This document shows positions 2,056 to 40,316 of a stretch of 64,000 nt of DNA, piece after piece. Where the stretch lies: assembly GCA_002269645.1 (NCBI GenBank), contig NIVC01000620.1:434001-498000 (forward strand), read 5' to 3'. The stretch is from Macrostomum lignano (taxonomy: Eukaryota). The notes beneath the pieces were generated by a model. The model was given only the letters and a program-made list of their open reading frames with translations, made no database searches and was not told where the DNA came from. The first letter of the stretch is position 1; the number at the start of each line of letters is the position of its first letter. The position numbers and the translations under genes are program-made.

Positions 2056-17222
<15,167 letters not shown>

Positions 17223-20116: not shown

Positions 20117-23100
20117 ATGAGCTCATGCTCAGACTGGAGAAATATTCGACTGGCAGCCTTGCTTCTAGCACTGCTGGGTTGCGTCGTGTTTACTGCCTCT
20201 GTGGCTGGATTCAACTACAGGTGGCATGCGAGTAACACGGATGAAGATGGGAGTCTGCACAACTCAGCTTTCGGTGGCCAAAGTGAGTTAATTGCATCTG
20301 GTGCTTTGTATGGGTTTGAATGTGGCTCGATAGGAGTACATGTCTAACAAGTGCATGTAGGGGTGTCCGTGTCTAACGGGTAGGGGTGTCCGTGTCTTAC
20401 AGGTAGGGGTGTCCGTGTCTAACAGGTAGGGGTGTCCATGTCTAACAGGTAGGGCCTGTCCGTGTCTAACAGGTAGGGCCTGTCCGTGTCTAACAGGTAG
20501 GGCCTGTCCGTGTCTAACGGGTAGGGGTGTCCGTGTCTAACGGGTAGGGGTGTCCGTGTCTAACAGGTAGGGGTGTCCGTGTCTTACAGGTAGGGGTGTC
20601 CGTGTCTTACAGGTAGGGGTGTCCGTGTCTAACAGGTAGGGCCTGTCCGTGTCTAACAGGTAGGGCCTGTCCGTGTCTAACAGGTAGGGCCTGTCCGTGT
20701 CTAACGGGTAGGGGTGTCCGTGTCTAACGGGTAGGGGTGTCCGTGTCTAACAGGTAGGGGTGTCCGTGTCTTACAGGTAGGGGTGTCCGTGTCTTACAGG
20801 TAGGGGTGTCCGTGTCTTACAGGTAGGGGTGTCCGTGTCTAACGAATGCGACTTTCAAGCAACCTGTAAAGCCATCCCAACTCGCCTGGGCTGCAGGTGA
20901 AACATCCGCGGTGCATCCGGGCAATGCAATCGCCGATCCCATGCAAGCCATCAACAGCTCCGAGAGCTGCACACCGCGCACTGTGGAGGCCTACCCGCCA
21001 GACCTGTTCACTTTGGCGCAGAAGCAGAGCGGCGCCATTCTCATTCACGCTTTTGTCTCGGCTTGGCTGTTTGTTGCTTTGGCGATCGTGTGCGACAATT
21101 ATTTTTTGGCTTCACTGGAAGTTGTTTGTGAAAGTGAGTGCTGGCACAGGTGCTCAACTGGGTTGTCACAGGTGCTCAACTGGGTTGTCACAGGTTCTCA
21201 ACTGGGTTGTCACAGGTGCTCAACTGGGTTGTCACAGGTGCTCAACTGGGTTGTCACAGGTTCTCAACTGGGTTGTCACAGGTGCTCAACTGGGTTGTCA
21301 CATGTGCTCAACTGGGTTGTCACAGGTGCTCAACTGGGTTGTCACAGGTGCTCAACTGGGTTGTCACAGGTGCTCAACTGGGTTGTCACAGGTGCTCAAC
21401 TGGTTTGTCACAGGTTCTCAACTGGGTTGTCACAGGTGCTCAACTGGGTTGTCACAGGTGCTCAACTGGGTTGTCACATGTTCTCAACTGGGTTGTCACA
21501 TGTTCTCAACTGGGTTGTCACATGTTCTCAACTGGGTTGTCACAGGTGCTCAACTTGGGTGTTACAGGTGCTCAACTTGGGTGTTACAGGTGCTCAACTG
21601 GGGTGTTACTGGTGCTTAGGTACCTGTACCTGGATGTGCCTGCACCTGTCCAACCCTAACCTTGATCTTGTCAATCACCTGCTATTTCGATCGCAGAGCT
21701 TCACCTGAAGCCGGACGTCGCCGGCGCCACCTTCATGGCTGCTGGCAGCTCAGCACCGGAGATGCTGGCTTCGGTCATTGGCGTCTTCATCGCCCAGAGC
21801 GACGTCGGTGTGAGCACCATAGTGGGCAGCGCCATCTTCAACAACCTGATGATTGTCAGTCTGTGCGGCTTGGCCGCCACCAGCGCTGTCTACCTGTCCT
21901 GGTGGCCGCTGTTTCGAGACTGCGGCTTCTACTGCATAAGTGTGGCCGCTATGATTGCTGTGATCTTCGACGGGATTGTCAACTGGTGAGCTTCATTTTC
22001 TTGCATTTTGTTTGTTTGAAAGACCTGCTGCTATTACAGTATGTGCCTGTCTGGCGATTAAAATGAATGGGAAGGGGCCATGGCGTTTCATTCACGATAT
22101 ACTCGTACCTTCCCTCCAGAAGCTGCGCCTTGAAACCAAAGAAACTACAGGTAGTTGCTAATAATAATATAAAAATAATTGATTACACCTGCCCTAATAA
22201 GCAGATGTGCAACCGACAGCTCAGCCGCAGCTATTGCACGGCGCATCTGAAGGCTGCGTACGGCTGTTCAGTCCAAGGACTGGGGGGGGAGTCGCCACAC
22301 ACACCCTCAATTTCCCCAGCTAATGCTGGCACCCATTCTACAGCTGGGTGAACTGAAGCAGTGCAGAGTTAAGGGTCACGAATCAAGGACACAAATTCAA
22401 GTCGTGAGTTCGACGCTCTAACCACTAGGCTAAAACCTCTTCCACACTATTGTCACACTCTCCCTGTCACCCTCCTTGTCACACTCTCCTTGCCACACTC
22501 CTTGTCACATTCCCTGTCACACTCCTTGTCACACTCCCTCTCACACTCCTTGTCACACTCCCTGTCACACTCCTTGTCACACTCCTTGTCACACTCCTTG
22601 TCACACTCCCTGTCACACTCCTTGTCACACTCCTTGTCACACTCCTTGTCACACTCCCTGTCACACTCCTTGTCATACTCCCTGTCACACTCCTTGTCAC
22701 ACTCCCTGTCACACTCCTTGTCATACTCCCTGTCACACTCCTTGTCACACTCCCTGTCACACTCCTTGTCATACTCCCTGTCACACTCCTTGTCACACTC
22801 CCTGTCACACTCCTTGTCATACTCCCTGTCACACTCCTTGTCACACTCCCTGTCACACTCCTTGTCATACTCCCTGTCACACTCCTTGTCATACTCCCTG
22901 TCACACTCCTTGTCACACTCCCTGTCACACTCCTTGTCATACTCCCTGTCACACTCCTTGTCACACTCCCTGTCACACTCCTTGTCATACTCCCTGTCAC
23001 ACTCCTTGTCACACTCCCTGTCACACTCCTTGTCACACTCCCTGTCACACTCCTTGTCACACTCCCTGTCACACTCCTTGTCATACTCTCCCTGTCTTAC

Positions 23101-26100
23101 TTGACTTACTTGACTCAGCTGCAGGGCTGTCCAGGGGGGACACAGCGGGAAGGCGCGAGCGCCCATTCCGCTAATCCCTGAACGGCCGACGCGTCGCTAT
23201 GGACGAAGGGTTGGCGCCGCCCAGGGAGGTCCCCCAGTGTCGCCAGCAGCTATAGTGCTCTCTGGAACAGAGAGTTCAGCCCTGCGGGTGGCCTGGAGGT
23301 TGCGCATGAGCTGATTAAAGTTTTCGGGTACTCTCCCTGTCACTCTCCCCTTGTCACACTCCCTGTCACACTCTCCCAGTCCCAGTACACGCCCATCTAG
23401 GTGGTATTCCTAGATATGAGTATCCAGGAACAGGTTGTGGCCTGGCTAACTCAATACTACTGTTTGATTCTCGCAACCCATCAAGGTACGAGTCTGTCAT
23501 CCAGCTAGCTCTATTCGCTCTATACATCGTGGTGATGGCCTTCAACAATCGAATCGACGCTGCAATCTCCAAGCGCTATCCTCGGCTCGGCACGGGGGGC
23601 GCGCAGCGATTCTACGACCAGAGTAGACAGCAGACGGACGACTCAAGTCGGGTGATGGACGACGACGAGCTGGCTGAGACGGTTGCCGGGCAGCAGCAAC
23701 AGCAGCAAATTGAAATCTGGACGTTTGAGACTGGCGGCAGACCGCAGGTGCTCGCTGGCAGTCAAGACGATGAAGAGCTGGATGTGGTTTGTGAGTTTGA
23801 GTTGGTTTGTTCCTGGCCAAAATAGTGATGCTAGTATTTTTTGTACACAAGCCTCTAATGAATGTGGTTGCTTACGGAATTGTAAAATGTCGGAATGAGT
23901 GACTTGGTTGTCTGTCTGACTCTCGACAATGTCATTTCTTGCGTTCAATCCCGTGAATGATCTAGTTACCTTGGATTTGTCCTTCTCCAAGGTGCTCAAC
24001 TGGGTTGTCACAGGTGCTCAACTGGGTTGTCACAGGTGCTCAACTGGGTTGTCACAGGTGCTCAACTGGGTTGTCACAGGTGCTCAACTGGGTTGTCACA
24101 GGTGCTCAACTGGTTTGTCACAGGTGCTCAACTGGGTTGTCACAAGTGCTCAACTGGGTTGTCACAGGTGCTCAACTGTGTTGTCACAGGTGCTCAACTG
24201 GTTTGTCACAGGTGCTCAACTGGGTTGTCACAAGTGCTCAACTGGGTTGTCACAGGTGCTCAACTGGGTTGTCACATGTGCTCAACTGGGTTGTCACAAG
24301 TGCTCAACTGGGTTGTCACAAGTGCTCAACTGGGTTGTCACAGCTGCTCAACTGGTTTGTCACAGGTGCTCAACTGGGTTGTCACAAGTGCTCAACTGGG
24401 TTGTCACAAGTGCTCAACTGGGTTGTCACAGGTGCTCAACTGTGTTGTCACAGGTGCTCAACTGGGTTGTCACAGGTGCTCAACTGGGTTGTCACAGGTG
24501 CTCAACTGTGTTGTCACAGGTGCTCAACTGGGTTGTCACAGGTGCTCAACTGGGTTGTCACAGGTGCTCAACTTGGTTGTCACAGGTGCTCAACTGGGTT
24601 GTCACAGGTGCTCAACTGGGTTGTCACAGGTGCTCAACTGGGTGTTGTCCTTTTCGCATGTGACGGGGACCAACGTCCAATGTAGGTAGACGGCTGCTTT
24701 ACACCCTGACTGAGTGCCTAAGTATCCGCCTGCGTGTCCGTGATCGGGGGTCACTACTTGACTCCTCGCTTGATGTGGGTGGGTCCAAGCTCGATTGAAA
24801 GCAACTGCCGCTAAAATTATCAATGCATATCAATGAAGATGTCGATCTGAAACCTCCATGCGCACGCACCCACCGACAGTAGTCAACCAAGGCCCCGAGT
24901 CGCCATTCCAACCGCCAGTCGGGCTGCTCCGACGGGTTTACTGGTTAATCGGGTTGCCATGGACAACGGCATTCTATTTAACCATACCAGACTGTCGGAA
25001 ACCCGGCATCTGGCGCCGACTGTTTGTCCTCACCTTCCTAGCCAGCGTGCTGTGGGTCTCGGGCCTGATCTACATGCTGGTGTGGATGGTCTGTGCCGTA
25101 GGCGACGCCATGGGCATCCCGGACACTGTGATGGGGCTGACGCTTCTGTCTATTGGCACCTGCATTCCGGACGCTCTGGCTGGGATTTTTGTGACTAGAA
25201 GTGGTGAGTTTTTGTTAAAATAATCTAAGATTAAAAGTCGTAGAATTTCATTCGGGTCTTTTCTTCCTAAAACTATGTTGCACAAATTTCATTTGGTGTG
25301 GTGCCATCTAATTTGATGAGGTGCCATTTCATTTGGTGTGGTGCCATTTTATTTGATGAGGCGCCATTTCATTTGATTAACAAAAAATGAAACGATTGCT
25401 CATACTCTGTTTTGCACAAGACATTGAACTACAAACAGTTGAAATGTCTAAGATAAAATTGCGAAAATGGGTCTGGCACAAAATTTGCGTCGAACTCCCA
25501 ACTTAGGGCGACTTGGAGGACGACATATTAACAGCCTTCATTCCATCGAGCTTTAGAGGTTATTTGACCTTTTATGACTGTTCGTAGTTGTTAACCATTG
25601 TCCTTGGTTTTTCTTCACTAGCTCAAACCATGACACCATGAATGCTAGGCCACTCTTGTGACATCTCGTGACGCAACCAGCTCTGAGGCAATTCTGCTGA
25701 GATACTCTCACACGGGGTGTACATTGGCGCTGACTTTCTAATCGTCAGGCATGTGCACTCTCTGTGCCCTAGGGGGGGGGTAGGCCCTGATGCATGTGAA
25801 GGAAATCTAAAATTCACCTACCGATTCGTGTGCAGGTCTGGCAGACATGGCCATCGCTAACAGCATCGCCAGCAACGTGTTCGACATCACGGCTTGCCTC
25901 GGCCTGCCCTGGTTCATCAGCACGGCCCTGCTGAACCCCGGCAGCACAGTCACCATCAGCTCCAGCGGTCTGACCTACACGGCTATCACTTTGCTGGTTA
26001 CTATCGTGTTCCTTCTAGTAGCAACACATGCCAATCGAATGAGGGTAGATAAGAAATTAGGATTCATCTTCTTGTTTGTTTATGTTGCCATAGTGACCGC

Positions 26101-26170
26101 TGCGTGTTTGTACGAGACTAACGTTTTTGGATCGTTCAATCCGGAGCCCTGCCCAAGACAAAGAATTTAG
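20117..26170 (+). CDS. SLC24A: K+-dependent Na+/Ca2+ exchanger (NCKX/SLC24 family), paralog 1
   Basis: Exons 20117-20282, 20897-21133, 21697-21985, 23486-23790, 24880-25203, 25836-26170 (551 aa; phases 1,1,2,1,1). Motifs: YPPDLFT, DVAGATFMAAGSSAPE, GSAIFN, PLFRD, IPDCRK, GIPDTVMGLT..GTCIPD, DMAIANSIASNVFDI, GLPW. The exon 1 and exon 5 boundaries are less certain. Confidence 0.93.
20355..20842 (+). repeat. 23/24-bp minisatellite, about 20 copies, NCKX-1 intron 1
   Basis: Unit AGGTAGGGGTGTCCGTGTCTAAC. Confidence 0.95.
21145..21610 (+). repeat. 22-bp minisatellite, NCKX-1 intron 2
   Basis: Unit CACAGGTGCTCAACTGGGTTGT. Confidence 0.97.
22450..23095 (+). repeat. 12-bp minisatellite, about 53 copies, NCKX-1 intron 3
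   Basis: Unit CACACTCCTTGT / CACACTCCCTGT. It is the source of the CHTP and ECDK ORFs. Confidence 0.97.
23988..24645 (+). repeat. 22-bp minisatellite (same family as 21145-21610), NCKX-1 intron 4
   Basis: Unit CACAGGTGCTCAACTGGGTTGT, about 29 copies. Confidence 0.97.
25286..25452 (+). mobile_element. Short copy of a minisatellite-bearing dispersed element (about 4-5 units + unique tail)
   Basis: CATTTCATTTG(A/G)TG(A/T)GGTGC units followed by a tail TTAACAAAAA..AAACGATTGCTCATACTCTGTTTTGCACAAGACATTGAA..AAATGTCTAAG that is nearly identical to 28008-28084. Confidence 0.7.
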
Positions 26171-26438
26171 CTAAAAGCAACCTAATTGCATACGTACTAC
26201 GAGCTACTTACAAGTAATAAGAAACGAATACCACATTTGCCGATATTATTAGAAGGTAGTTGATTTTTTGAAAGTACGAGTACAAAGCGCTGTCACGCTA
26301 AAATATTGAATAAATCGAAAATACGATTATAATCAGTTGATTTCCTAATTTGAGTAAAGCTTCTTATTTTTATCTGTAAAATGACTGTACTAACATACAA
26401 ACGATGAGAGAGATTAAATAAAAAAATTCATTCATAAT

Positions 26439-26735
26439 GGTTGGCCGTGGCCCAGTGGTCTGGCGTGGCGCTCTCGTGTGCCAGCGGCCCAAGCTCGATT
26501 CCAAGTGCAGTCACATTAATTTTGAAGGCTAAATTGGAATTTCGGCTTGGCTCTGCTCGTGAAATTAACGGCCTTGAAGGCCAACCCCCCAAGGCACAGT
26601 GAAGTGTACATGCCTAACGATAAATAAAGTTAGGGCCGCTGTACACTCCTGTGTGAGTGTGTGCCTGTACGTATGACTGCGTACGTATCCGCGCGCTTGT
26701 GTGCCTGCTCAGGGGAGTCGGCGCAATGATGGGCA
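26439..26735 (+). mobile_element. tRNA-headed SINE, copy 1 (3' end not recognised)
   Basis: A-box-like TGGCCCAGTGG, B-box-like GCTCGATTCC. The body matches 33818-34175. Confidence 0.8.
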
Positions 26736-26834
26736 GTATCTGTTCTTTGATAAAGTGCAAGTTCCTAACTTGCTGCTTTTGCATAGGATTGCAAAGGATT
26801 CCGTCTTGAAGTTTTTATCGTTAAAGAAATCCCA

Positions 26835-28084
26835 CCATTTCATTTTAGAGGCGCCATTCATTCATTTGATGAGGTGCCATTTCATTTAATGTGGTGCCAT
26901 TTTATTTGATTTGGTGCCATTTCATTTGGTGAGGCGCCATTTCATTTGATGAGGTGCCATTCCATTTGATGAGGTGCCATTTCATTTGATGAGGTGCCAT
27001 TTCATTTGATGAGGTGCCATTTCATTTGATGAGGTGCCATTTCATTTGATGAGGCACCATTTCATTTGATGAGGTGCCATTTCATTTGATGAGGTGCCAT
27101 TTCATTTGATGAGGTGCCATTCCATTTGATGAGGCACCATTTCATTTGATGAGGTGCCATTTCATTTGATGAGGCACCATTTCATTTGATGAGGTGCCAT
27201 TTCATTTGATGAGGTGCCATTTCATTTGATGAGGTGCCATTCCATTTGATGAGGCACCATTTCATTTGATGAAGTGCCATTCCATTTGATGAGGCACCAT
27301 TTCATTTAATGAGGTGCCATTTCATTTGATGAGGTGCCATTTCATTTGATGAGGTGCCATTCCATTTGATGAGGCACCATTTCATTTGATGAGGTGCCAT
27401 TCCATTTGATGAGGCACCATTTCATTTAATGAGGTGCCATTTCATTTAATGAGGTGCCATTTCATTTGATGAGGTGCCATTTCATTTGATGAGGTACCAT
27501 TTCATTTGATGAGGTGCCATTTCATTTGATGTAGTACCATTTCATTTGATGTGGTGCCATTTTATTTGATTTGGTGCCATTTCATTTGGTGAGGCGCCAT
27601 TTCATTTGATGAGGTGCCATCTAATTTGATGAGGTGCCATTTCATTTGATGAGGTGCCATCTAATTTGATGAGGTGCCATTTCATTTGATGAGGTGCCAT
27701 CTAATTTGATGAGGTGCCATTTCATTTGATGAGGTGCCATCTAATTTGATGAGGTGCCATTTCATTTGATGAGGTGCCATCTAATTTGATGAGGTGCCAT
27801 TTCATTTGATGAGGTGCCATCTAATTTGATGAGGTGCCATTTCATTTGATGAGGCGCCATCTAATTTGATGAGGTGCCATTTCATTTGATGAGGTGCCAT
27901 CTAATTTGATGAGGTGCCATTTCATTTGATGAGGTGCCATCTAATTTGATGAGGTGCCATTTCATTTGATGAGGCGCCATTCCATTTCATGAGGCGCCAT
28001 TCCATTTGATTAACAAAAATTAAACGATTGCTCATACTCTGTTTTGCACAAGACATTGAATTACAAACAGTTAAAATGTCTAAG
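26835..28084 (+). repeat. 20-bp minisatellite, about 58 copies, plus a tail shared with 25286-25452
   Basis: Unit CATTTCATTTGATGAGGTGC. The 3' part alternates with a CATCTAATTTG variant, giving a 40-bp higher-order period. Confidence 0.96.
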
Positions 28085-28384
28085 CACCAGCTTAAGTTAT
28101 TAGTCAAATACAAACGAAGCCCCTACCCTCTATCAAATCAATTCGATATCTTCTTCAGTGTTTCAAGCTTGTATAAGCCAGCCAAATATTCGGTTAATTG
28201 ACTCAGAAACCGGATCTCCTCAGTTTTATTTAACCAGGCTTAACGGCTGGGAAACCATGTGCCAGTTGAAATCTAATACACACCTTGTCAACATCCTACT
28301 GAATATAAATCTACCAAAAAGTGTCGATTTTCGAATCGTCTCTAATTCTCGTCCATTGACAGATCCTTGAAAGTTCCATGGAAA

Positions 28385-29166
28385 ATGGTTTGTACTTTTG
28401 TTTTCGCATTCTTGCTGTTGCACAGCTCAACTGCCATAAAGCTCATCGGTGTTACCTACATCGGTTGCTTCAAGGACGAATTTAGGAGTAGCAGAGACCT
28501 GGATGGTCTAAGAGGACTGCTTTCGGTTGATAAATACCCAGTGCGCACTTTTGGTGCAGTGACGACGGAAAAAAATTCGCCAAAGTTTTGCACTCAAATC
28601 TGCTCAAGCATCGGATTCAAGTTTTTCGGATTGCAGAATACAGACGAGTGTTTCTGTGGAAACTACTTTGGGAGATATGGGCGGGAGCCGCAGCACAAGT
28701 GTAATCACAGATGTCCGGGCAATGCGACCGAAATCTGCGGCGGTAATCTTCGAAATTCCGTGTACCGCTTGAGCTATCAATTCGGTGAGTTTCCTATTCT
28801 GAAGCTTCTGGGTCACTAGTCGCCCCGAAGGCTTCCTATAAAAGAATGTATGCGTACCTTTTAACGTGTCGAATATGATCCAAACCTACAAAAACTTTGA
28901 CAGAATCTACAGGCATCAATCAGTTTGTTAAGCAACTCGACAACCGTGTCGATGAGCCGAAAAAACTTTTGTCCGAAGACCTGCTGCTACTTGCCGAGCG
29001 AACTGTCAGTGCTCATCGCCTGCTGCAGTGTGCCGCTAAGTGCTCAATTGTTGGCTGTCAAGTTGTAGTTTTTTCTGAGAAACAACGACGTTGCGGACTG
29101 TTTTGGAATGTTCAGGTTGTTAAAGATCGACGTTTGGTTGATTTAGAAGTCTTTGTTCGTGGCTAA
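28385..29166 (+). CDS. Secreted WSC-domain + PAN/Apple-like domain protein A (220 aa)
   Basis: Exons 28385-28784 and 28904-29166 (phase 1). Signal-like MVCTFVFAFLLLHSSTA. WSC pattern YIGCFKD..FCTQIC..FFGLQNTDECFCGN..CNHRCPGNATEICGG..NSVY. The second exon has LLQCAAKC..GCQVVVF..RCGL. The PAN/Apple call rests on Cys spacing only. Confidence 0.85.
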
Positions 29167-29845: not shown

Positions 29846-30554
29846 ATGCTTCGCCATCTCTTTTTCTTGCTTTTTTGTCAATGCTTAGCCGCTAAGAAGC
29901 TCACTGGTTTCGACTACATCGGCTGTTTCAAAGACAAAGACAACCGCGACATGCCAGGACTCGAAGGCATGCCTCCAATTGAGGGCCACAGCGTTGTCGG
30001 TACCTCAATTAGTAATGCCACCCAGAACTCGCACGAATTCTGCAGCCATATTTGCTCTCTGTTCAACTTTCGCTACTTTGCTGTACAGTTTGGCAAGCAG
30101 TGCTTCTGCGACAACTCCTATGGAGGAATGGGAGCAGGTCTGGAGAGCGAATGTAGCTTTGGTTGTCCTGGCAATTCGAACCAGAAATGCGGAGGATTTG
30201 ATCGAAACTCTGTTTTCAAGCTGAACTATGCTAGTGAGTAAAGCATTTCTGCATTGATACACTTTTGATACACTTTCTAAAGATCCTAACCATTGCATTA
30301 CAGACGTGGACGAATATTTTCAAGGGCAGATTAATCGCAACTCGACTCTGAGCTACGTTACGAGCCCTGACGCACCTGCCGATCGTACTTTTATCGCTCG
30401 AAGTTTGCTGCAGTGCGCCTCGAAATGCTCTTCGACTGCTGGTTGCCAAGCGGTAATTTTCACCAAGCAAAGAAAGCTGTGCCGCCTGCTTGGAGCTGCG
30501 GAAGGTCTGCCTACATTGGTTGGAACCGACGAACTGGTGTTTATTCGTGGCTGA
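29846..30554 (+). CDS. Secreted WSC-domain + PAN/Apple-like domain protein B (212 aa)
   Basis: Exons 29846-30233 and 30304-30554 (phase 1). Signal-like MLRHLFFLLFCQCLA. Motifs YIGCFKD..FCSHIC..YFAVQFGKQCFCDN..CSFGCPGNSNQKCGG..NSVF and LLQCASKC..GCQAVIF..LCRL. It ends VFIRG, like paralog A (VFVRG). Confidence 0.87.
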
Positions 30555-31159
30555 ATGGATCGAAAAGTGGTCAAGAACTTTGATGTCAACGAAAAAATTT
30601 AGAACCAAAAAAAAAAAATAAAACATTTTCGATCTGCTAAAGGACTCAAGGATTAGCTTGCATTCGCAATTGACACCAGACTTAACCTGCTCTTTGTCAT
30701 TTTATTAAGCTGTTATAATCAATTACAATACCGTAGTTACCGTAATTCTCCAGGTAAGTGTTAGCACACCAATAACCTTTCTTAACTAGTAGTTGTTCAA
30801 AGGTCGTGTCAGCACCCATACATTTTTATTTGCTGAGAACGAAGCTGATATGAGAAAGTGTTTTCATAGGTGCAGAGAGATAGAGAAGCGCAGTGGACAC
30901 CATACGCTGTGAGAATATTTATCTAATTTAATTTCCTATTTCACAGTTTGATATGCCTTGGCCAGCAATGGTGAGCACCCTCTTGACAGCTTTAATAACC
31001 CGAGCTTTCACTTTTTCGATTCAATATTTTTAGAGGTGAAAAATGACCATATAAATATGGCCTTTTAATAAAAGGCTCAAATTTTGTTATTATGTCACTA
31101 AAATGCCTTTTAATGCATATAAATATGGCCTTTTAATGCAAGGCTCAAATTTTGTTATT

Positions 31160-32282
31160 ATGTCACTAAAATGTCAAAAATTTACTCGGCGAGACAGAAC
31201 TTTTACCACTTTACTTTTGGCTGCATGGCTGTTCGGCATGGCCCTGTATGGGCTGGCCTACAAAACGGCGACTGCAGGTGAGTCAAAACTTGTCCTTTTT
31301 CAAGGAGATCTCAACTTGAGCACCAGCACGAAGTAAAGCTCAGATTTTGTGCTGCTAGTGGACTTAGGAGTTTGAAGTTTAAAGCAACCAATAATTTTCG
31401 ATATGTGCAGATTTCTGGATGTTTGACAGAGATTTTGTTAGAACTTTAGAATCCATTCTAGAGTTTTAAGTTGGTATAAAATCCCCATTTTGAGCCTAGG
31501 AATGCAGGAGCCTTGATTTTCGGCTTTTTCGGGTCAAATTAGTCCGACAAGTTGTCGATTGAACATCTGTTGCAATTCTAAATAAAATATTCGATTATCT
31601 CTTGTTGATTAATATTTGAAAATATCGGTCTCGTGTTGCAATGAAGGCGGAATTCTACATGTAAATGTCAGCTATACATTCAGAGGCAGAATGTGCTTTT
31701 TATGTTAAAAAAATCCAGCTCATAGGTGTTAAATGCTTCCTTCGCCTTTGCAAGCAATTCTTATCTAAACCGAGTCATTTTTATAAGTTCAGAATGTAAA
31801 CAGCATTAAATAGCTCTGCCTTTAATAGCAGCTGATGCCTCAAGGTACGGTAGAATGCTAGATTACAGGTGTAAATGTACATTACTGTCTACAGCACAAG
31901 AGAAGAAAGAATCAATTAAACTGGATTGACAGTAGTCTAGGTGATGTCGGTAACTTGAAAAGGTTTTCCACCAACCATGACTACCATTTGATCTTCCACC
32001 AGGTTTAACGTCCCAAGGTGACAATCCGTCCGACTTTAACTTTGGAACCAGTGTCGATGAAAGCAGTTCGCACCTGCGACACCTACTGTTTGTTCATGTT
32101 CACAGCAATTGTACGCCTCGATCAGTGGAGACTTACCCACCTGACCTGTTCACTCTGGAGCAGAAACAGCACGGAGCAATTATTATTCATATTGCAGTTG
32201 CCGTGTGGCTGTTTGCCGCTTTGGCTGTGATCTGCAATGACTACTTTCTGGCTTCAATGGAGGTGCTTTGCGATGGTAAGTG

Positions 32283-32326
<44 letters not shown>

Positions 32327-32363
32327 GCTACTACTACTACTACTGCTACTACTACTACTACTG

Positions 32364-32425
<62 letters not shown>

Positions 32426-32468
32426 GCTACTACTACTACTACTACTGCTACTACTACTACTACTACTG

Positions 32469-32546
<78 letters not shown>

Positions 32547-32547
32547 T

Positions 32548-32597
<50 letters not shown>

Positions 32598-32608
32598 TTA
32601 CTACAACA

Positions 32609-32681
<73 letters not shown>

Positions 32682-32684
32682 TTG

Positions 32685-32725
<41 letters not shown>

Positions 32726-32728
32726 GCG

Positions 32729-32792
<64 letters not shown>

Positions 32793-32793
32793 T

Positions 32794-32859
<66 letters not shown>

Positions 32860-32886
32860 CACTACTACTACTACTACTACTACTAT

Positions 32887-32973
<87 letters not shown>

Positions 32974-35900
32974 CACTACTTATGTACTTTGTAACACTTT
33001 CAGTTCTGCACCTGAAGCCGGACGTCGCAGGCGCCACCTTCATGGCCGGCAGCAGCTCAGCTCCGGAGCTGCTCACCTCAATAATCGGCGTGTTCTTCGC
33101 CGAGAGCGACGTCGGTGTGAGCACGATCGTTGGCAGCGCCGTGTTCAACATCCTCATGATTGTGAGCATGTGCGGCCTGTTGTCCTCCAGGCTGGTCTGC
33201 CTGTCCTGGTGGCCGCTATTCAGAGACTGCAGCTTCTACTGCGTCAGCGTTGTCGCGTTGGTCGCGGTCATCTACGACGGTTTGGTGACTTGGTGAGCGG
33301 TTGTCACTCTGTTAAGCCATTGTATTAGCTGAGAATGTAGAACCAGGTAAGCGAGGTCTCAAGGTATAAGAATTTTTTATTCCTTATAAGTCGCAGCAAC
33401 TAAAATCGTTAAAAATAATAACGAATCACCTCTAAAAGGCACAGGGTAGAGTGTTCAGGTTGAAAAGCTACGTGACCAATTAGATAGAATCAAGGACAAC
33501 TTAAGTAGAAGGACGCAACACTCAAAATATACGAGTATATGGTAAATGTTTTGAAGGCAACTTTTCGCCGAAAAATACACTACAGAGATAGGAGATTTTT
33601 TAATTTTTTCAGCACAAAAGTTGTTATTGCTTTTGATAAGAGAAAGACTCAGTGCTCATCTTTTGATATGTTGTGCCTTCCTTATTGCTCTATTGAAATT
33701 CATAAAGCTTCTTGTTCAGAAAATTAGGATTTCGAGTTTAGCGTCCTATATATATGTTACTTAAGTAGTCCTTTGGATAGAATACGATAGAAAACTCAAG
33801 GATGAAGGCGCAACCCAGGGGGGCCGTAGCCCAGCGGTAGCGCAGCTGCTCTGGTGTGCCAGCGACCCAGGCTCGATTCCAAGTGCAGTCACATTAATTT
33901 TGGGCTGAATTGGAATCTCGGCTTGGCTCTGCTCGTGCAATTAACGGCCTTGAGAGCCAACCCCTCAAGGCGCAGTGATGTGTACATGCCCTGTACACTT
34001 GAAATAAAGTTAGGGCCGCTGTACACTCCTGTGTGAGTGTGTGCCTGCGTACGTATCCGCGCGCTTGTGTGCCTGCTCAGGGGAGTCGGCGGAATGGGCA
34101 GTAATGCCTCTCGCCGGTTGTGTGCCCATGTCGCTTAAAGTGCGCCAGGGTACCCCCCTGCCTCTAATAATAAAAAAGGCGCAACCCAACTTACACGCAG
34201 ACTTTACACTACTAAGTCAGTAGTATCATTCATATAAGTCTACAGACTACACTTTGTGTTACTGTAGTTTTCAGTAGTTTTCAGTTCCTTTGTAATTGTC
34301 TAAGAAACCAAGTTTCCCATCCTTCCACTTCAATTTAATGTCAATTTAATTCTATTGTAAACTTCAGGTTCGAGTCCGTAATCCTGGTAGGCATGTACAT
34401 CATGTACATAGTGTTGATGTTCTTCAATGATCGCCTGGACAGCGCAATATCAAGCCGGTATCCCAGCCTGGGCACCGGGGCAGCCTACAAGCTCTATGGA
34501 AAAACTGACGCCATCGACAATGAGAGGGAGGTGTTGCTCAGCCAGTCTGGCGAATCGCCGAGAGGATATGCCAGCATTGACTTGCCTCTGGTTTCAGTCA
34601 CTGGTAAATGCAAACATTTTTATGTGACCAGATATAGAGCATTAGCTAATGTCTGCGGGCCAGGTGAGGAGAGGAGAGAGGATAGGAGATGAGATATGAG
34701 ATGAGAGTAGAGGTAAAAGAGAGAGAATATATGAAGAAGAGGAGAGAGAAGGGGGGAAAGGGAGAAAAATAGAAAAGGGAGAGGATCGAGAGAAGGGGGA
34801 GAGAGGATCGAGAGAAGGGGGAGAGAGGATCGAGAGAAGGGGGAGAGAGGATCGAGAGAAGGGGGAGAGAGGATCGAGAGAAGGGGAGAAAGGATCGAGA
34901 GAAGAGGGTTGAGAGAGGATCGAGAGAAGAGGGTTGAGAGAGGATCGAGAGAAGAGGGGGGAGAGAGGATCGAGAGAAGAGGGGGATAGAGGATCGAGAG
35001 TAGAGGGGCAGAGAGGATTGAGAGAAGAGGGGAGAGAGAGGATCGAGAGAAGAGGGGGAGAGAGGATCGAGAGAAGAGGGGGAGAGAGGATCAAGAGAAG
35101 AGGGGGAGAGAGGATCGAGAGAAGAGGGGGAGAGAGGATCGAGAGAAGAGGGGGAGAGAGGATCGAGAGAAGAGGGGGAGAGAAGATCGAGAGAAGAGGG
35201 GGGATCGAGACAAGAGGGGGAGAGAGGATCAAGAGAAGAGGGGAGAGAGGATCGAGAGAAGAGGGGAGAGAGGATCAAGAGAAGAGGGGGAGAGAGGATC
35301 GAGAGAAGAGGGGGAGAGAGGATCGAGAGAAGAGGGGGAGAGAGGATCGAGAGAAGAGTGGGAGAGAGGATCAAGAGAAGAGGGGGAGAGAGGATCGAGA
35401 GAAGAGGGGGAGAGAGGATCGAGAGAAGAGGGGGGAGAGAGGATCGAGAGAAGAGGGGGAGAGAGGATCGAGAGAAGAGTGGGAGAGAGGATCGAGAGAA
35501 GAGGGGGGAGAGAGGATCGAGAGAAGAGGGGGAGAGAGGATCGAGAGAAGAGGGGGAGAGAGGATCGAGAGAAAAGGGGGAGAGAGGATCGAGAGAAGAG
35601 GGGGAGAGAGGATCGAGAGAAGAGCTGGGAGAAAATAGGTAATAAAATTGAGAAGAGATCCTGGATTGCTATTGCGAATTTGAAGTTAATAACTACGGGG
35701 GTATTTTTGATAAAAGTCCCTCATTCAGAGACGGAAACTTTCTTTCTTTACATTCGTCAAAGCCCCAGAAGACCAGGGTCCAGAGTCGCCATTTCTGATG
35801 CCTCAGGGCTTTCTCCGCCGAACCAGCTGGATCTGCATGCTGCCGTGGACCTGCGCATTCTTTGTCAGCATTCCCGACTGTCGAAGACCGGGCATTTGGA

Positions 35901-37080
35901 GGCGCCTGTTCCCGCTGACTCTGGTCTCTAGCGTGGCCTGGATATCCGGGATAAGCTATCTCATGGTGTGGATGGTCTGCGCTGCGGGCGACGCACTGGG
36001 CATCCCGGACACAGTGATGGGGCTCACTCTGCTGGCCGCCGGCACCTCTGTGCCTGACTGCATGGCCGCTGTCTTTGTCTCTAAAGGAGGTGTGCAAAAA
36101 CTTTTGATTGGAGAGTGGGGCTACTACGAGTATTACGAATAGCTATAGACACAAACACACACACACAAGCACACACACTGTCCCTTGAAGGCTGGGACTC
36201 TGAGCAGATATTATTTAACTTCAAACTTAAACCAATTTGCGTGCAAAAAGCCCTATAGGATACTGCATCTGCAACTGGGAGGTATCTACAAAACCCATTA
36301 AACAATGAGACAGTTTGTGACTAGACATGCCAATGCTTTGACCCCCCGCGCCCCAGATTGTGACTCGTTGTGGAAATCAATATTTATGCTTCAGGGCGCC
36401 AAAATATAGCGCTATCGGCACCAAAATGAATCTCAAAATAAATGCTTGCCTGCGGCGCCAAAATGAGTGCCTGTCATTTCGTGCCTGTCTGTGGCGCCAA
36501 AGTGAGTGCCTGCGGCGCCAAAATGAGTGCCTGCGGCACTAAAAGAATGCCAAATGCTTTGATTCCCAAAACGTTGTAGAGTTTTTTATTTTGTCCCCCC
36601 ATATAAAAAATCCATGCCGACATCCCGGTTGGCCAGAATGCAGAGGTGTAGCAAAGGAATTCCAGGGCTTTTCGAGGAAGTTCAGTCGCCCAACGAACAA
36701 CGATGCAAATCAATAAATATTGAAACTTCTCGTTCAACTTTGCAGGACTGGGCGATATGGCGGTATGCAACAGCATTGGCAGCAATGTGTTCAACATCCT
36801 CATCTGCTTAGGCCTGCCCTGGTTAATCAGCACCGTCATTATCGAGCCTGGAAGCTCAGTTATCATCAATTCGTCTGGTCTAACGTATTCTTCCATCACC
36901 CTGTTCTCCACAATAGTATTCCTGTTCATCATTGTCTATTATAACAAAATGCAATTGAACTTTCGTCTGGGACTTACCTGCCTCATTGTTTACCTAGTAG
37001 TGACGACATTGTCGTGCTTGTACGAGACTAACGTGTTTGGACCATTGAATCCGCCGCCGTGTCCCAGGACGCGGATGTGA
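31160..37080 (+). CDS. SLC24A: Na+/Ca2+(-K+) exchanger (NCKX/SLC24 family), paralog 2
   Basis: Exons 31160-31277, 32003-32275, 33004-33292, 34368-34603, 35763-36089, 36746-37080 (525 aa; phases 1,1,2,1,1, the same as paralog 1; exons 3 and 6 have identical lengths, 289 and 335 nt). Motifs: YPPDLFT, DVAGATFMAGSSSAPE, GSAVFNI, AAGTSVPD, GLGDMAVCNSIGSNVFNI. The start exon is least certain. Confidence 0.93.
32283..32980 (+). repeat. (CTA)n trinucleotide microsatellite, about 230 units, filling NCKX-2 intron 2
   Basis: Direct reading. It is the source of the poly-Y/T/L/S/V ORFs. Confidence 0.98.
33818..34175 (+). mobile_element. tRNA-headed SINE, copy 2, full length with target-site duplication
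   Basis: A box TAGCCCAGCGG (33827), B-box-like GGCTCGATTCC (33870), tail TAATAATAAAAA. Flanked by AAGGCGCAACCCA at 33805-33817 and 34176-34188. Confidence 0.9.
34775..35625 (+). repeat. Purine-rich 22-25-bp minisatellite, NCKX-2 intron 4
   Basis: Unit GAAGAGGGGGAGAGAGGATCGAGA and length variants. Confidence 0.95.
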
Positions 37081-38457
37081 AATATTCAACTTCCATAGCT
37101 TTTTCAAGTATAGTCTCAATGTTTTTCCTAATTGCTTGGGGAGTAAGATTTTGAATATTTGGAAGAGCTTAACAGTTCGTTATGAAATACATTATTAATT
37201 TTCATAATATCTATTTTTTATATTCCATTGAAGTACCTTGATGAGTCATTTAATTCAACTACAAATTTAATTTAAAATGTTCTTTTTGTCCTTTCAAAAG
37301 ACGCAACATTCATTCACTTCAGATAAAAGTGCTTATTTACCCATATAGTGCGGCACACTGCCTGATTTGCCTCACTACTTCAAAAGTCCATATTTACTAT
37401 TCAAAAAGCCGCCAATATTGCCCCATTCAGTGCAACTTCCGGCTCTGGAGACTTTAGAAATTTTTCTAAGGAATGGCTAAGGTGGTTAGATGGCATGGAC
37501 TACCACTCTGCAAAGGGCTTCTATTTTATACGCTTTTATTCATAAAATCTTAGAACTTTTATAGAGTTGTCAACTGAGCAATTTTTAGGTCTCTTGCGTC
37601 AAACAATATAGATGGACTGTCCTTCTGAATTTTCTGTAGACCCCAACTCGTCCCTAAATCTTCACTCTCTCTCGGCATGCTCTCCAGTCCTGAGCTTGAC
37701 ACATCTCTTCTCAAAGCTTGTAAATAAGCAAACTTCGAGCACGCATGAGTCCTTAGACGCTCACTTTTCTGCCAGAGTAATCAGACAGCTGTACTTGGCC
37801 TTTTTCATTTTCTTACTAAAACTTGGGGTCTCCTTATGATCTCTCTCTCCCTTTCTGTGCTCTCATTTGGAGCAGAAAAGAAGTGACTGACTACAGGCTT
37901 GCTGCTCGGGCAGGAAATAGCAGCAAGGAGAGGGAGGGAGGGAGAGAGCGTGTGTGCCAGATTGTGTGCACCGCTCGTTGCCATAGCAACAGCGGAGAGG
38001 TGCGCGCATGCAGGCTCTCAGCACAGCAGCAAGCAGTTTTAGATATGATTAAAGACTTTCGTGTCTCTTCTGGTCTGTGAGCGAGACCGCACTGAAATTC
38101 AATTGGCACTACTGGGTCTTCACACTGTATAGCCCAGTGTTCCATGCTCATTCTCTCACTGGCTGCTCACTGGCACACATCAACCCCACCCAGCTGGGGG
38201 CCCCGATTCCATTTGCTCTTTTTTTGCCTCAGCTATTCGTTTTGTGCAAGCAGAGCATGAGCACAAAGCATTAGAACTCTCTGTTGATTCTGGAGAGAGT
38301 TTTCTTCACAAAGAAAAGACGCCCCTAAGTGAATATATATATGATGCGCTGCTTGTAAAAATAGCCATCAAAACTGGAGAGAGAGAGCATCGACTGCACT
38401 AAAACAGACAACGGCCGAAACTGAAAGAAACTTCCGATAGCAGCTGAAAAGTTTGAA

Positions 38458-40316
38458 ATGAAGCGGAACATTGAACGGACGGCGACTCCGCCAGACAGAC
38501 AAGCGACATACGAAGCCGACCGGGTCGCTGAAGATGACAGCACTCAGCAGCAGCAGGAGCAGCAAGCAAAGAATCCAGGAGCTGTACAAAGACCGCGAAC
38601 CGCCCTTGAGGTTGCTCGGTCCAGCGGCATGTTCAAGGACTACTTAGCTGGATTAGACAACCTCCGCTCGATAGTAAACGATTGCGAGAACCGTCTCGCC
38701 CAGGCTTTGAACGAGTTCTACGGCACAACGGAAAAAGACGAGCAGATGTTCAACGCATTTAACATCGAGGTCAACAAAGCGTTCGAAGCGTGCAACTCCT
38801 GCCTGGACAAGGCCGGCCATCAGGCTATCATTGTTGATGGCCAAGCCCCGATTGCTACGCTGGTGAACAAGCTGAAGGAATACCGATTGGCCGCTAATCC
38901 GGAGGACACTCAACTGCTGCTACAGTTTTGGGAGTCGTTCAAGCTGGCTCTGGAGCAGCTGCAGACCATCGCGGATGACTACGAGCGTCGAGTGCTGTCA
39001 AAACTGCGCACAGGGTGCCTGATTGCCTCGAGCGGCGCAATGGCGACCGCCAAATCGCCGCTGTCGAAGGCCTACGAAGCCGAGGCCGCCGCCTACTCCA
39101 AGGAGCTGGAGACCGTCCGCACGAGAGTCCGACTGCTCTGCCACAGCGCCGGCACCCACATGCGAATGGAGCTGCTAGGCAAAGCCTCTCACACCGAGAG
39201 AGTCCTCATCAACTGTAACGACGACTTCTATCCGATCCTGTGCGTAGTGCCTGACCTGACGGTCAAGCTGGAGTCCATGGCCCGCATCGCCTACCAGTGG
39301 CTGGACAAAGACGAGACCTACTTGTTTGAGGTGTCCCGCCAACTGCGCGATAAACGAAGCGAAACACGCGAGATGGAACAGCAACTCAGAGCTGAGCGCG
39401 AGAAACACCGACTGCTACTGAAGTCAGTGAAGTCAGCTTACCTGATGTGTCAAAACAGCAAGAAGAGACTTCGAGAAATCACGCAAGAGCTGAAAAACCT
39501 CGAGGAGCATATTGAGCACTCGGCTCGGGAACGGCGGGCCAAGATGGACGAGAAAAAGCAGAAGAAGGAGATGGCCGACTTTTTAGACTTGAGCATCACT
39601 CAGACTAAAATGAATTACGCGCTCCAGGTGAGTTCTTTCGTTGATTAGACAGATGCTTTGATCGTGCTAACGAAGTGAAGTCAAATGCGGGTAAAAACAG
39701 ACCACAATTACTTTTAACTTTTTTGGGTAGCGTATTGGCTGGCTATCCAGATCCCTATGCCACACGAGCTGGTAATCAAAGTGATGTACTCTAATACTCT
39801 GTATGCACATACTCCATCAGACAAAGTGTTATTTCTTACTGATGATATTTTTCGTAATTTTCATTGATAAACAAGTTTGTTGCACTCGTAATGGGCTAAA
39901 ACATCCCATTTCCCATCTACCAGCTCAAACGCCAGCGTCTGATGGCCCAGATTCAGGAACTGGAGGAGTTCCTGCGCAAAGTTGAGCAGGAAATCAGCTC
40001 GCTCAAGACCCAGATTCAAACAAAGACTAATGAGAGAAAGTCTGCCGAAGACCTGTACCAAGCGCAGGACAGCAACTTCGCGAATATGAAGACCGACTTA
40101 GAAGGCTACACTAAAAAAGTACAAGAGATGAGCAACGAACTCCGCGGCGTCCGCCAGCATCTCAGTCATCTGGAGAGCATCCAGAGCCTCAAAACCAGTC
40201 CGGAGACTGTGGACACTTTCTACGAAAGGCCTCGCAGCGTGAAGCTGGCGCCGTCGCTCATGGAGTCGATCAACATGAAAAAACGACGTCTCCTGAAGCA
40301 GTCAGTTAAAAGTTGA
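38458..40316 (+). CDS. Uncharacterised coiled-coil protein (520 aa, 2 exons)
   Basis: Exons 38458-39627 (donor CAG|GTGAG) and 39924-40316 (acceptor CTACCAG), phase 0. Non-repetitive, coding-like codon use, long E/K/Q/L heptad-rich C-terminal half. I do not recognise the family. Confidence 0.85.

What the first reader, a model, noticed from the sequence alone, without database searches (positions are those of the whole stretch)
36781..36800. Natural D575N-equivalent: NCKX paralog 2 is predicted to be K+-independent
Seen: paralog 2 reads GSNVFNI (AAC at 36793-36795) where paralog 1 reads ASNVFDI (GAC at 25883-25885). Counting from the PD aspartate gives the same 27-residue spacing as D548 to D575 in human NCKX2. 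Established: Asp575 confers K+ dependence in NCKX2, D575N makes exchange K+-independent, and NCX proteins have Asn there. Inference: after tandem duplication one copy may have become an NCX-like, K+-independent exchanger on an NCKX scaffold, giving a linked pair with different stoichiometry. The ORF is otherwise intact.
Basis: partly seen in the sequence, partly recalled or inferred. Interest (0 to 1): 0.78.

Follow-up and report, generated by a model that had tools for sequence, protein, structure and literature searches.

The report
Flatworm NCKX paralog with NCX-like pocket
One of two neighbouring calcium-exchanger (SLC24/NCKX) genes in the flatworm Macrostomum lignano naturally carries Asn at the one residue whose Asp-to-Asn mutation makes human NCKX2 potassium-independent, so it may work like an NCX, but its expression and transport are untested.

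Summary
The window is Macrostomum lignano contig NIVC01000620.1. It holds two same-strand, six-exon SLC24 (NCKX) genes 5 kb apart. Paralog 1 (551 aa) is identical to annotated BOX15_Mlig021664g2 and has GAC (Asp) at 25883-25885. Paralog 2 (525 aa, intact, all GT-AG) has AAC (Asn) at 36793-36795. Both lie 27 residues after the alpha-2 PD aspartate. This residue aligns to NCX_Mj D240 and to the Asn of NCX1 and NCLX. At all 12 ion-coordinating positions paralog 2 matches NCX1, and it differs from the SLC24 consensus only here.

Paralog 2 is unannotated in a transcript-based annotation, has no nearby poly(A) signal, and no expression evidence could be obtained. It also carries three other very rare substitutions, two of them next to the pocket. 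Paralog 1 is not a conventional partner: it has Cys where S545C inactivates human NCKX2. The duplication is ancient (synonymous sites saturated).

Asn here is rare but recurrent, at roughly 2% of 270 SLC24 sequences. Abalone and a coral also have physically linked Asp/Asn copies, and the abalone Asn form is under purifying selection. K+-independence is a reasonable, directly testable prediction, not a result.

The parts
31160..31277 (+). Paralog 2 exon 1 (start codon, N-terminal signal/anchor helix)
   Evidence: Inferred from the ORF, the GTGAGT donor and its resemblance to paralog 1's N-terminus. There is no transcript evidence. This is the least certain exon.
32003..32275 (+). Paralog 2 exon 2 (extracellular N-terminal loop, TM1; includes N118 at 32236-32238)
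   Evidence: GT-AG, phase 1, in frame with exon 1. N118 replaces an Asp that is present in 243 of 270 relatives.
33004..33292 (+). Paralog 2 exon 3 (alpha-1 repeat; E152 at 33066-33068; G146/S147 at 33048-33053; N179 at 33147-33149)
   Evidence: 289 nt, the same length and phase as paralog 1 exon 3. SAPE Glu is retained. The A182G/G183S-equivalent changes are seen in 2 and 1 of 270 sequences.
34368..34603 (+). Paralog 2 exon 4 (TM5 and start of cytosolic loop)
   Evidence: GT-AG, correct phase.
35763..36089 (+). Paralog 2 exon 5 (end of loop, TM6-7, first half of alpha-2; S401 at 36047-36049; D404 at 36056-36058)
   Evidence: Acceptor at 35763 (an alternative in-phase acceptor lies 6 nt downstream). 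The donor AAAGGAG|GTGTGC is the only one that keeps the frame.
36746..37080 (+). Paralog 2 exon 6 (second half of alpha-2, TM9-10, stop codon)
   Evidence: 335 nt, the same length as paralog 1 exon 6. TGA at 37078-37080.
36793..36795 (+). AAC = Asn431 of paralog 2, equivalent of NCKX2 D575, NCX_Mj D240 and the NCX1/NCLX Asn
   Evidence: It lies in a predicted helix (417-447) where the 10-residue pLDDT block means are about 88-93.
20117..26170 (+). Paralog 1 gene (exons 20117-20282, 20897-21133, 21697-21985, 23486-23790, 24880-25203, 25836-26170), 551 aa
   Evidence: The translation is 100% identical over 551 aa to P0003 = BOX15_Mlig021664g2. AATAAA lies 139 nt after the stop.
25883..25885 (+). 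GAC = Asp457 of paralog 1, the D575 equivalent
25161..25163 (+). TGC = Cys427 of paralog 1, the S545 equivalent (with Ser423 at 25149-25151 in place of the A541 equivalent)
   Evidence: The signature STC in place of ATS occurs only in paralog 1 and its database copies among 270 sequences. NCKX2 S545C has <1% activity (PMC12150658).

Best explanation
Paralog 2 is an old, intact, still-constrained SLC24 (NCKX-lineage) gene of Macrostomum lignano. Its ion pocket has been converted to the NCX configuration by one G-to-A change, Asp to Asn, at the D575/D240 position. In the CaCA fold this side chain belongs to the central 'Smid' site. SLC24 exchangers are thought to use that site for K+ (or a fourth Na+), and NCX does not use it for a transported ion. 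With Asn there, the protein most likely exchanges Na+ for Ca2+ without co-transporting K+, giving NCX-like 3Na+:1Ca2+ instead of 4Na+:(1Ca2+ + 1K+). It would do this on an SLC24 scaffold that lacks the NCX regulatory loop.

Shown: gene structure, residue equivalence, identity with NCX1 at the 12 liganding positions, rarity of Asn, the sister relation to paralog 1, and a slower rate than paralog 1.

Inferred: expression, transport activity, loss of K+ coupling and stoichiometry.
For: - The ORF is an intact six-exon GT-AG model, and Pfam finds two Na_Ca_ex domains at E = 3e-50.
- The AF2 model is confident (pLDDT 82, pTM 0.77) and matches only CaCA exchangers.
- N431 aligns to NCX_Mj D240 and to the NCX1/NCLX Asn.
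- The 12-position signature ASSESN|ATSDSN is unique among 270 sequences. It differs from the clade consensus ASSESN|ATSDSD (102 sequences) only at this site, and it equals the NCX1 residues seen.
- D575N removes K+ coupling in NCKX2 while exchange persists, and D240N NCX_Mj is fully functional (PMC5749117).
- Paralog 2 has fewer lineage-specific changes than the annotated paralog 1 (39 vs 69, chi2 8.3).
- dN/dS is about 0.16-0.22 against its relatives even though synonymous sites are saturated.
- Asn-bearing SLC24 genes persist elsewhere. The Haliotis rubra and H. cracherodii orthologues keep Asn with dN/dS 0.22 at dS 0.41.
Against: - No expression evidence exists. The gene is missing from the transcript-based GenBank annotation and from all protein collections searched.
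- No canonical poly(A) signal lies within about 960 nt of the stop, whereas paralog 1 has one at 139 nt.
- Exon 1 is inferred only.
- Lineage-specific changes in paralog 2 do not significantly avoid conserved columns (Fisher p = 0.23), so constraint on its own recent branch is not demonstrated.
- It carries other very rare substitutions: the A182G and G183S equivalents beside the pocket, and TM1 D118N. NCKX2 A182C is inactive, so activity cannot be assumed.
- The D575N result comes from one human isoform about 45-50% identical to this protein.
- Paralog 1 tolerates a Cys that is inactivating in NCKX2. This shows that single-site results do not transfer cleanly to this clade.
Confidence: 0.4

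Rival explanations
1. Paralog 2 is silent or only recently inactivated: an unexpressed relic or young unprocessed pseudogene. Its ORF has not yet been broken, and Asn431 and the other rare pocket-side changes reflect relaxed constraint rather than a new function.
For: - It is not annotated, although the annotation rests on deep whole-animal RNA-seq with a 0.5 RPKM cut-off, and it is absent from the UniProt M. lignano proteome hits.
- No nearby poly(A) signal.
- Six of 90 near-invariant family columns are violated, against a median of 1. Three of these are D118N, G147S and D431N, and A146G is a further very rare change.
- Lineage-specific changes show no significant avoidance of conserved columns.
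Against: - The 525-codon ORF across six exons is intact, with all splice sites canonical.
- It evolves more slowly than the expressed paralog 1, and average dN/dS is about 0.2.
- The annotation pipeline also discarded transcripts overlapping repeats, and paralog 2's introns hold a 698-bp (CTA)n array and an 850-bp minisatellite.
- The two intact-looking WSC/PAN genes next door are also unannotated, so gaps in this annotation are common.
- Paralog 1 itself is absent from the Logan-derived protein sources, so absence from the database says little.
Confidence: 0.3
2. Paralog 2 is expressed and transports, but Asn431 does not abolish K+ coupling in this sequence context. It would remain a K+-dependent exchanger with altered K+/Na+/Ca2+ affinities, or it would have some other changed selectivity.
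For: - Paralog 1 shows that this clade tolerates a pocket substitution (the S545C equivalent) that kills NCKX2, so site effects depend on context.
- Paralog 2 has extra changes in the alpha-1 helix facing the pocket.
- Glu and even Ile occur at this column in other SLC24 relatives, which suggests the site is tunable rather than a binary switch.
Against: - In the alignments made here, the Asn-bearing CaCA proteins NCX1 and NCLX belong to families described as exchanging Na+ (or Li+) for Ca2+ without K+. That point rests on established knowledge and was not tested here.
- D575N and D240N retain activity without K+ coupling.
- Apart from this site, all 11 other liganding positions are canonical.
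Confidence: 0.2
3. The AAC codon is an assembly or base-calling error for GAC.
For: REAPR scored only about 64% of Mlig_3_7 bases as error-free (PMC5730564). A single G/A difference separates the codons.
Against: - Long-read assembly errors are mostly indels, and this ORF has none.
- The same gene shows several other independent rare substitutions, so it is genuinely divergent.
- Asn occurs naturally at this site in other phyla.
Confidence: 0.03

Closest known systems
SLC24 / NCKX K+-dependent Na+/Ca2+ exchangers (NCKX3/4/5-like invertebrate clade; human NCKX2 as the functional reference)
   Same: Both are of SLC24 descent; best named hits are 45-59% identical and all are SLC24. Both have two Na_Ca_ex domains, alpha-1 GxSAPE with the Glu188 equivalent, alpha-2 GTSVPD with the Asp548 equivalent, a short cytosolic loop, and an N-terminal signal/anchor helix.
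   Different: Paralog 2 has Asn instead of the Asp575 equivalent that confers K+ dependence. It also has Gly/Ser at the A182/G183 equivalents and Asn for a conserved TM1 Asp.
Engineered NCKX2 D575N (Kang et al. 2005, J Biol Chem 280:6834)
   Same: Same residue change at the same structural position, on an SLC24 scaffold. The mutant is K+-independent with Na+/Ca2+ exchange retained (as cited in PMC5749117).
   Different: Paralog 2 is a natural gene about half-identical to NCKX2 with additional substitutions. Its function has not been measured.
SLC8 / NCX1 Na+/Ca2+ exchanger
   Same: Identical residues at all 12 positions that coordinate ions in NCX_Mj, including the Asn. The fold matches.
   Different: Only distant sequence similarity (E about 1e-13). 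Pfam finds no Calx-beta/CBD regulatory loop in paralog 2. Paralog 2 is not an SLC8 member by descent.
NCX_Mj (archaeal exchanger) D240 / D240N
   Same: N431 aligns to D240, the Smid-site residue. D240N is fully functional and K+-independent.
   Different: Wild-type NCX_Mj has Asp yet is K+-independent, so Asp is not sufficient for K+ coupling. The scaffold is prokaryotic.
Other natural Asn-bearing SLC24 relatives found here (Haliotis rubra and H. cracherodii NCKX4-like; Acropora palmata XP_074639369.1 units 2-3; Orchesella dallaii CAL8091630.1; Glandiceps talaboti XP_077988426.1)
   Same: Asn at the same column. In Haliotis and Acropora the Asn copy is physically linked to an Asp copy, as in M. 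lignano.
   Different: These are independent origins in other phyla. Most carry further pocket changes (Haliotis A206S equivalent; Orchesella Glu at the D548 equivalent; Glandiceps a degenerate motif). Only paralog 2 has the exact NCX1 signature.

Membership tests
CaCA superfamily | Two Na_Ca_ex (PF01699) membrane domains carrying the alpha-1 and alpha-2 repeats | tested here: met
   Two stretches, E = 3.1e-50 for paralog 2 and 1.1e-43 for paralog 1.
CaCA superfamily | Ten-helix antiparallel-repeat exchanger fold | tested here: met
   AF2 model has pLDDT 82 and pTM 0.77. The only significant Foldseek matches are NCLX, NCX_Mj, NCX1, VCX1, CAX and YfkE.
SLC24 (NCKX) | Sequence groups with SLC24 rather than SLC8, NCLX/CCX or CAX | tested here: met
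   Best hits are all SLC24-named, at 45-59% identity and E down to 1e-195. NCLX, NCX1 and NCX_Mj reach only E = 1e-12 to 1e-16. Paralog 2 sits inside a 200/200-supported Macrostomum SLC24 expansion.
SLC24 (NCKX) | Central acidic pair: Glu188 equivalent in alpha-1 (SAPE) and Asp548 equivalent in alpha-2 (xPD) | tested here: met
   E152 and D404 in paralog 2; E156 and D430 in paralog 1.
SLC24 (NCKX) | Asp575 equivalent in alpha-2, the residue that confers K+ dependence | tested here: not met
   Paralog 2 has Asn431 (AAC, 36793-36795). Paralog 1 has Asp457.
SLC24 (NCKX) | K+-dependent transport with 4Na+:(1Ca2+ + 1K+) stoichiometry | not testable with these tools
   Needs flux or electrophysiology measurements on the expressed protein.
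SLC8 (NCX) | NCX-type liganding residues, including Asn at the D240 position | tested here: met
   The signature ASSESN|ATSDSN equals the NCX1 residues in the alignments.
SLC8 (NCX) | Large cytosolic regulatory loop with Calx-beta (CBD1/CBD2) domains | tested here: not met
   Pfam finds only Na_Ca_ex. The low-confidence loop spans only about residues 270-320.
SLC8 (NCX) | Sequence groups with SLC8 | tested here: not met
   The NCX1 match is limited to the alpha-repeat segments at E about 1e-13.

The most novel reading that the evidence does not exclude
SLC24 exchangers have switched from K+-dependent to NCX-like, K+-independent coupling several times independently, each time through the same Asp-to-Asn change. 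The switched copies were kept under selection next to an Asp-bearing sister gene in flatworm, abalone and coral. Such linked pairs would give one locus two Ca2+-extrusion stoichiometries, and M. lignano paralog 2 would be the cleanest natural example because it has the exact NCX1 liganding set on an SLC24 scaffold.
Probability: 0.3. Interest if true: 0.65.

Novelty: new variant of a known kind. Interest (0 to 1): 0.42.

Why it matters
K+ co-transport lets NCKX exchangers extrude Ca2+ against gradients where NCX would reverse. How the CaCA family switches between the two coupling modes is known only from engineered mutants. A natural SLC24 gene with the NCX liganding set would offer evolutionary test cases for that rule, and so would the similar Asn (and Glu) variants found here in abalone, coral, springtail and acorn worm. 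These cases would show whether one residue really sets the stoichiometry in native contexts. M. lignano is transgenic-tractable, so the prediction can be tested in vivo as well as in cell lines. If paralog 2 turns out to be unexpressed or inactive, the finding reduces to an ordinary divergent paralog.

Tried and rejected
1. Looked for paralog 2 as a protein in the 5.8-billion-sequence collection, first with the full length and then with a 131-aa query spanning the exon 5/6 junction. Nothing was more than 67% identical, so there was neither transcript support nor independent read support. This was judged uninformative, because the expressed paralog 1 is itself absent from the Logan sources.
Look-up of the last-exon ORF found nothing.
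3. Tried to read Kang et al. 2005 directly; it is not held. The premise rests on how PMC5749117 and PMC4232491 cite it.
4. Searched for literature on natural K+-independent SLC24 or D575N variants and found none.
5. Looked for a solved NCKX structure to define the K+ site. None exists in the PDB copy, by sequence or by fold.
6. Tested whether the linked Asp/Asn arrangement is general. It is not: the Glandiceps and Orchesella Asn genes have no SLC24 neighbour within 10 kb.
7. Considered whether the WSC/PAN ORFs are N-terminal exons of paralog 2. Rejected, because each unit ends in a stop codon and has its own signal-like start.
8. Considered paralog 2 as closer to P0001 than to paralog 1, since identity is 58% vs 53%. 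Rejected, because bootstraps favour P1+P2 (186/200 vs 8/200) and the identity difference reflects paralog 1's faster rate.
9. The third homologue search was deliberately left unused. No remaining question that bears on the verdict could be answered by it.

Full report
**What is at the coordinates.** The codon at 36793-36795 is AAC and the one at 25883-25885 is GAC. Both lie in the last exon of two similar genes on the + strand. The DNA is eukaryotic and intron-containing. Stop-to-stop frames and splice-site inspection gave two six-exon models with canonical GT-AG introns at matching phases.
- Paralog 1: exons 20117-20282, 20897-21133, 21697-21985, 23486-23790, 24880-25203 and 25836-26170; 551 aa.
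- Paralog 2: exons 31160-31277, 32003-32275, 33004-33292, 34368-34603, 35763-36089 and 36746-37080; 525 aa.
- Exons 3 and 6 have identical lengths in the two genes (289 and 335 nt).
With the only frame-preserving donor, the spacing is D404 to N431 in paralog 2 and D430 to D457 in paralog 1, so 27 in both.

**Source and annotation.** Paralog 1's translation is 100% identical over all 551 residues to BOX15_Mlig021664g2 of Macrostomum lignano. That protein is encoded on contig NIVC01000620.1 of GCA_002269645.1. This validates the gene-modelling approach and identifies the organism.
- In that record no gene is called in the 10 kb downstream of paralog 1. Paralog 2 is therefore unannotated.
- Its best database matches are other M. 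lignano paralogs at 58-59% identity.
- The GenBank annotation of this assembly derives only from transcript evidence. Novel transcripts below 0.5 RPKM and transcripts overlapping repeat annotations were removed (PMC5730564).
- Absence therefore hints at low or no expression, but it is not proof. Paralog 2's introns carry a 698-bp (CTA)n array and an 850-bp minisatellite.
- Two intact-looking WSC+PAN genes between the paralogs are also unannotated.
- Paralog 1 itself is not present in the Logan-derived sources of the protein collection.
- A junction-spanning query and an exact ORF look-up found nothing.
- Paralog 1 has AATAAA 139 nt after its stop. Paralog 2 has no AATAAA or ATTAAA for about 960 nt.

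**Family and residue equivalence.** Both proteins have two Na_Ca_ex domains, and their named relatives are all SLC24/NCKX3-5-like.
- No NCKX structure exists in the PDB copy. The nearest solved proteins are NCLX, NCX1 and NCX_Mj.
- HMMER alignments put N431 on D240 of NCX_Mj and on the Asn of NCX1 (GSNAVNVF) and NCLX (IIFNIL).
Asn substitution of Asp575, the equivalent of Asp240, makes NCKX2 K+-independent with Na+/Ca2+ antiport retained. D240N NCX_Mj is fully functional, and Asn is prototypical of eukaryotic NCX (PMC5749117 citing Kang et al. 2005).
- An AF2 model of paralog 2 is confident (pLDDT 82, pTM 0.77). N431 lies in helix 417-447 and E152 in helix 136-162.

**The whole pocket.** I mapped the 12 NCX_Mj ion-coordinating positions (A47, T50, S51, E54, S77, N81, A206, T209, S210, E213, S236, D240) onto 270 aligned SLC24 relatives.
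- The clade consensus is ASSESN|ATSDSD (102 sequences).
- Paralog 2 reads ASSESN|ATSDSN. This signature is unique in the set, differs from the consensus only at the last position, and equals the residues NCX1 shows in the alignments.
- Two caveats follow. First, paralog 2 has very rare neighbours of the pocket: Gly at the A182 equivalent (2/270) and Ser at the G183 equivalent (1/270). It also has Asn for a TM1 Asp (2/270). NCKX2 A182C is inactive (PMC12150658).
- Second, paralog 1 reads ASSESN|STCDSD, with Cys at the S545 equivalent. NCKX2 S545C has <1% activity. The supposedly conventional partner is thus itself atypical, and single-site results from NCKX2 do not transfer cleanly to this clade.

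**How rare is Asn here?**

| Sample | Residues at the D575 column |
|---|---|
| 120 closest homologues | all Asp except two Haliotis proteins (Asn) |
| 77 alpha-2 fragments | one Asn (P0170, unidentified assembly GCA_013565555.1) |
| 150 representatives of 50%-identity clusters (exhaustive search, 18,489 hits) | 136 D, 6 E, 1 I, 3 genuine N, 3 gaps and 1 misaligned alpha-1 N |

- The Asn representatives belong to an Acropora cluster, Orchesella dallaii and Glandiceps talaboti. The Glu ones belong to hemichordates, echinoderms and Varroa.
- A nematode survey had already noted that this Asp is nearly universal (PMC4232491).
- I found no paper describing a natural K+-independent SLC24.

**Evolutionary context.**
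- Paralogs 1 and 2 are sisters in 186/200 NJ bootstraps, inside a 200/200 Macrostomum-specific expansion whose other members all have Asp.
- The duplication is old: 53% identity, with pS 0.67 (saturated).
- Average dN/dS is about 0.22 (P1-P2) and 0.16 (P2-P0001).
- Paralog 2 has fewer lineage-specific changes than paralog 1 (39 vs 69). This argues against long-term decay.
- Its own changes do not significantly avoid conserved columns (p = 0.23), so recent constraint is unproven.

**Parallels.**
- In Haliotis cracherodii the Asn gene lies head-to-head with the orthologue of the Asp-bearing H. rufescens NCKX3-like gene. The H. rubra and H. cracherodii Asn orthologues show dN/dS 0.22 at dS 0.41 with Asn conserved.
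- The Acropora palmata model XP_074639369.1 looks like three fused tandem units whose alpha-2 motifs read D, N, N.
- Linked Asp/Asn copies therefore arose independently at least three times. The Glandiceps and Orchesella Asn genes have no such neighbour.

**Verdict.** The mechanistic reading is that paralog 2 is an NCX-like, K+-independent exchanger on an SLC24 scaffold. This is the best single explanation, but it rests on inference for expression, activity and coupling, and I give it about 0.4. The main rival, at about 0.3, is an unexpressed or recently silenced copy. A functional but still K+-sensitive exchanger gets about 0.2, and sequence error about 0.03. By descent paralog 2 is an SLC24 member that fails the family's functional signature residue. 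By pocket chemistry it resembles SLC8, but it lacks the SLC8 regulatory architecture.

Noticed in passing
window 25149-25163 (paralog 1 codons S423, C427): The annotated paralog 1 has Ser and Cys at the A541 and S545 equivalents (SIGTCIPD instead of AAGTSxPD). This signature is seen only in this gene among 270 relatives. S545C abolishes transport in human NCKX2 (PMC12150658), so paralog 1 may itself have unusual ion handling or none.
   Followed up: partly
window 28346-29163 and 29849-30551 (+): Two tandem small genes, each with a signal-like start, a WSC domain (Pfam E = 2e-14 for the second copy) and a PAN/apple domain. Each ends in a stop after F(V/I)RG. They lie between the two exchanger genes and are not annotated in the GenBank record.
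   Followed up: partly
window 21145-21616 and 23990-24643: The same 22-bp minisatellite unit (AGGTGCTCAACTGGGTTGTCAC) forms arrays of about 21 and 30 copies in two different introns of paralog 1. Further arrays are a 23-bp unit at 20357-20843, a 24-bp unit at 22443-23088, and a 40-bp unit at 26835-28010 downstream of the gene.
   Followed up: no
window 32283-32980 and 34779-35632: Paralog 2's introns 2 and 4 carry a (CTA)n microsatellite of about 233 copies and a 24-bp GA-rich minisatellite of about 36 copies. These could have triggered the repeat-overlap filter of the published annotation.
   Followed up: no
window 31050-31173: A roughly 68-bp direct duplication includes paralog 2's predicted start codon. 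The upstream copy has its own ATG at 31092, which opens a 14-codon uORF. The start of paralog 2 is therefore uncertain, and translation may be uORF-regulated.
   Followed up: no
window 26400-26900 vs 33800-34220; 25381-25503 vs 28010-28198: Similar translated segments recur downstream of paralog 1 and inside intron 3 of paralog 2. Others recur in paralog 1's intron 5 and upstream of the first WSC gene. They look like dispersed repeat or transposon fragments.
   Followed up: no
window ~3800-17222 (+): Upstream neighbour is an annotated P4-type phospholipid flippase gene (1203 aa; PhoLip_ATPase_N/C, Cation_ATPase). The locus-tag suffix g2 of paralog 1 may mean it is the second gene of a shared transcriptional unit; I did not check this.
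   Followed up: no
window 38425-39645 (+): A 407-aa open frame, rich in Glu, Lys and Gln with a coiled-coil-like composition, has no Pfam match. It starts about 1.3 kb after paralog 2's stop. The first ATTAAA after paralog 2 (38048) lies just upstream of it.
   Followed up: no
L003 1-6769 (-) and 10001-43525 (+) (Haliotis cracherodii JAJLRC010000017.1): Abalone has a head-to-head pair of SLC24 genes. One has Asp (orthologue of H. rufescens NCKX3-like) and one has Asn at the D575 equivalent. The Asn copy also has SAAE instead of SAPE in alpha-1.
   Followed up: partly
P0346 (Acropora palmata XP_074639369.1, 1327 aa): The gene model appears to fuse three tandem SLC24 units whose alpha-2 motifs read FDIL, FNML and FNIL. 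This is probably an annotation merger of a tandem array that mixes Asp and Asn copies.
   Followed up: no
P0204, P0236, P0243, P0269, P0308, P0338, P0321: Glu (six cluster representatives: hemichordates, echinoderms, Varroa) and Ile (one, Ptychodera) also occur at the D575 column. Three Glandiceps variants (one Asn, two Glu) lie on the same 24.8-Mb scaffold.
   Followed up: no
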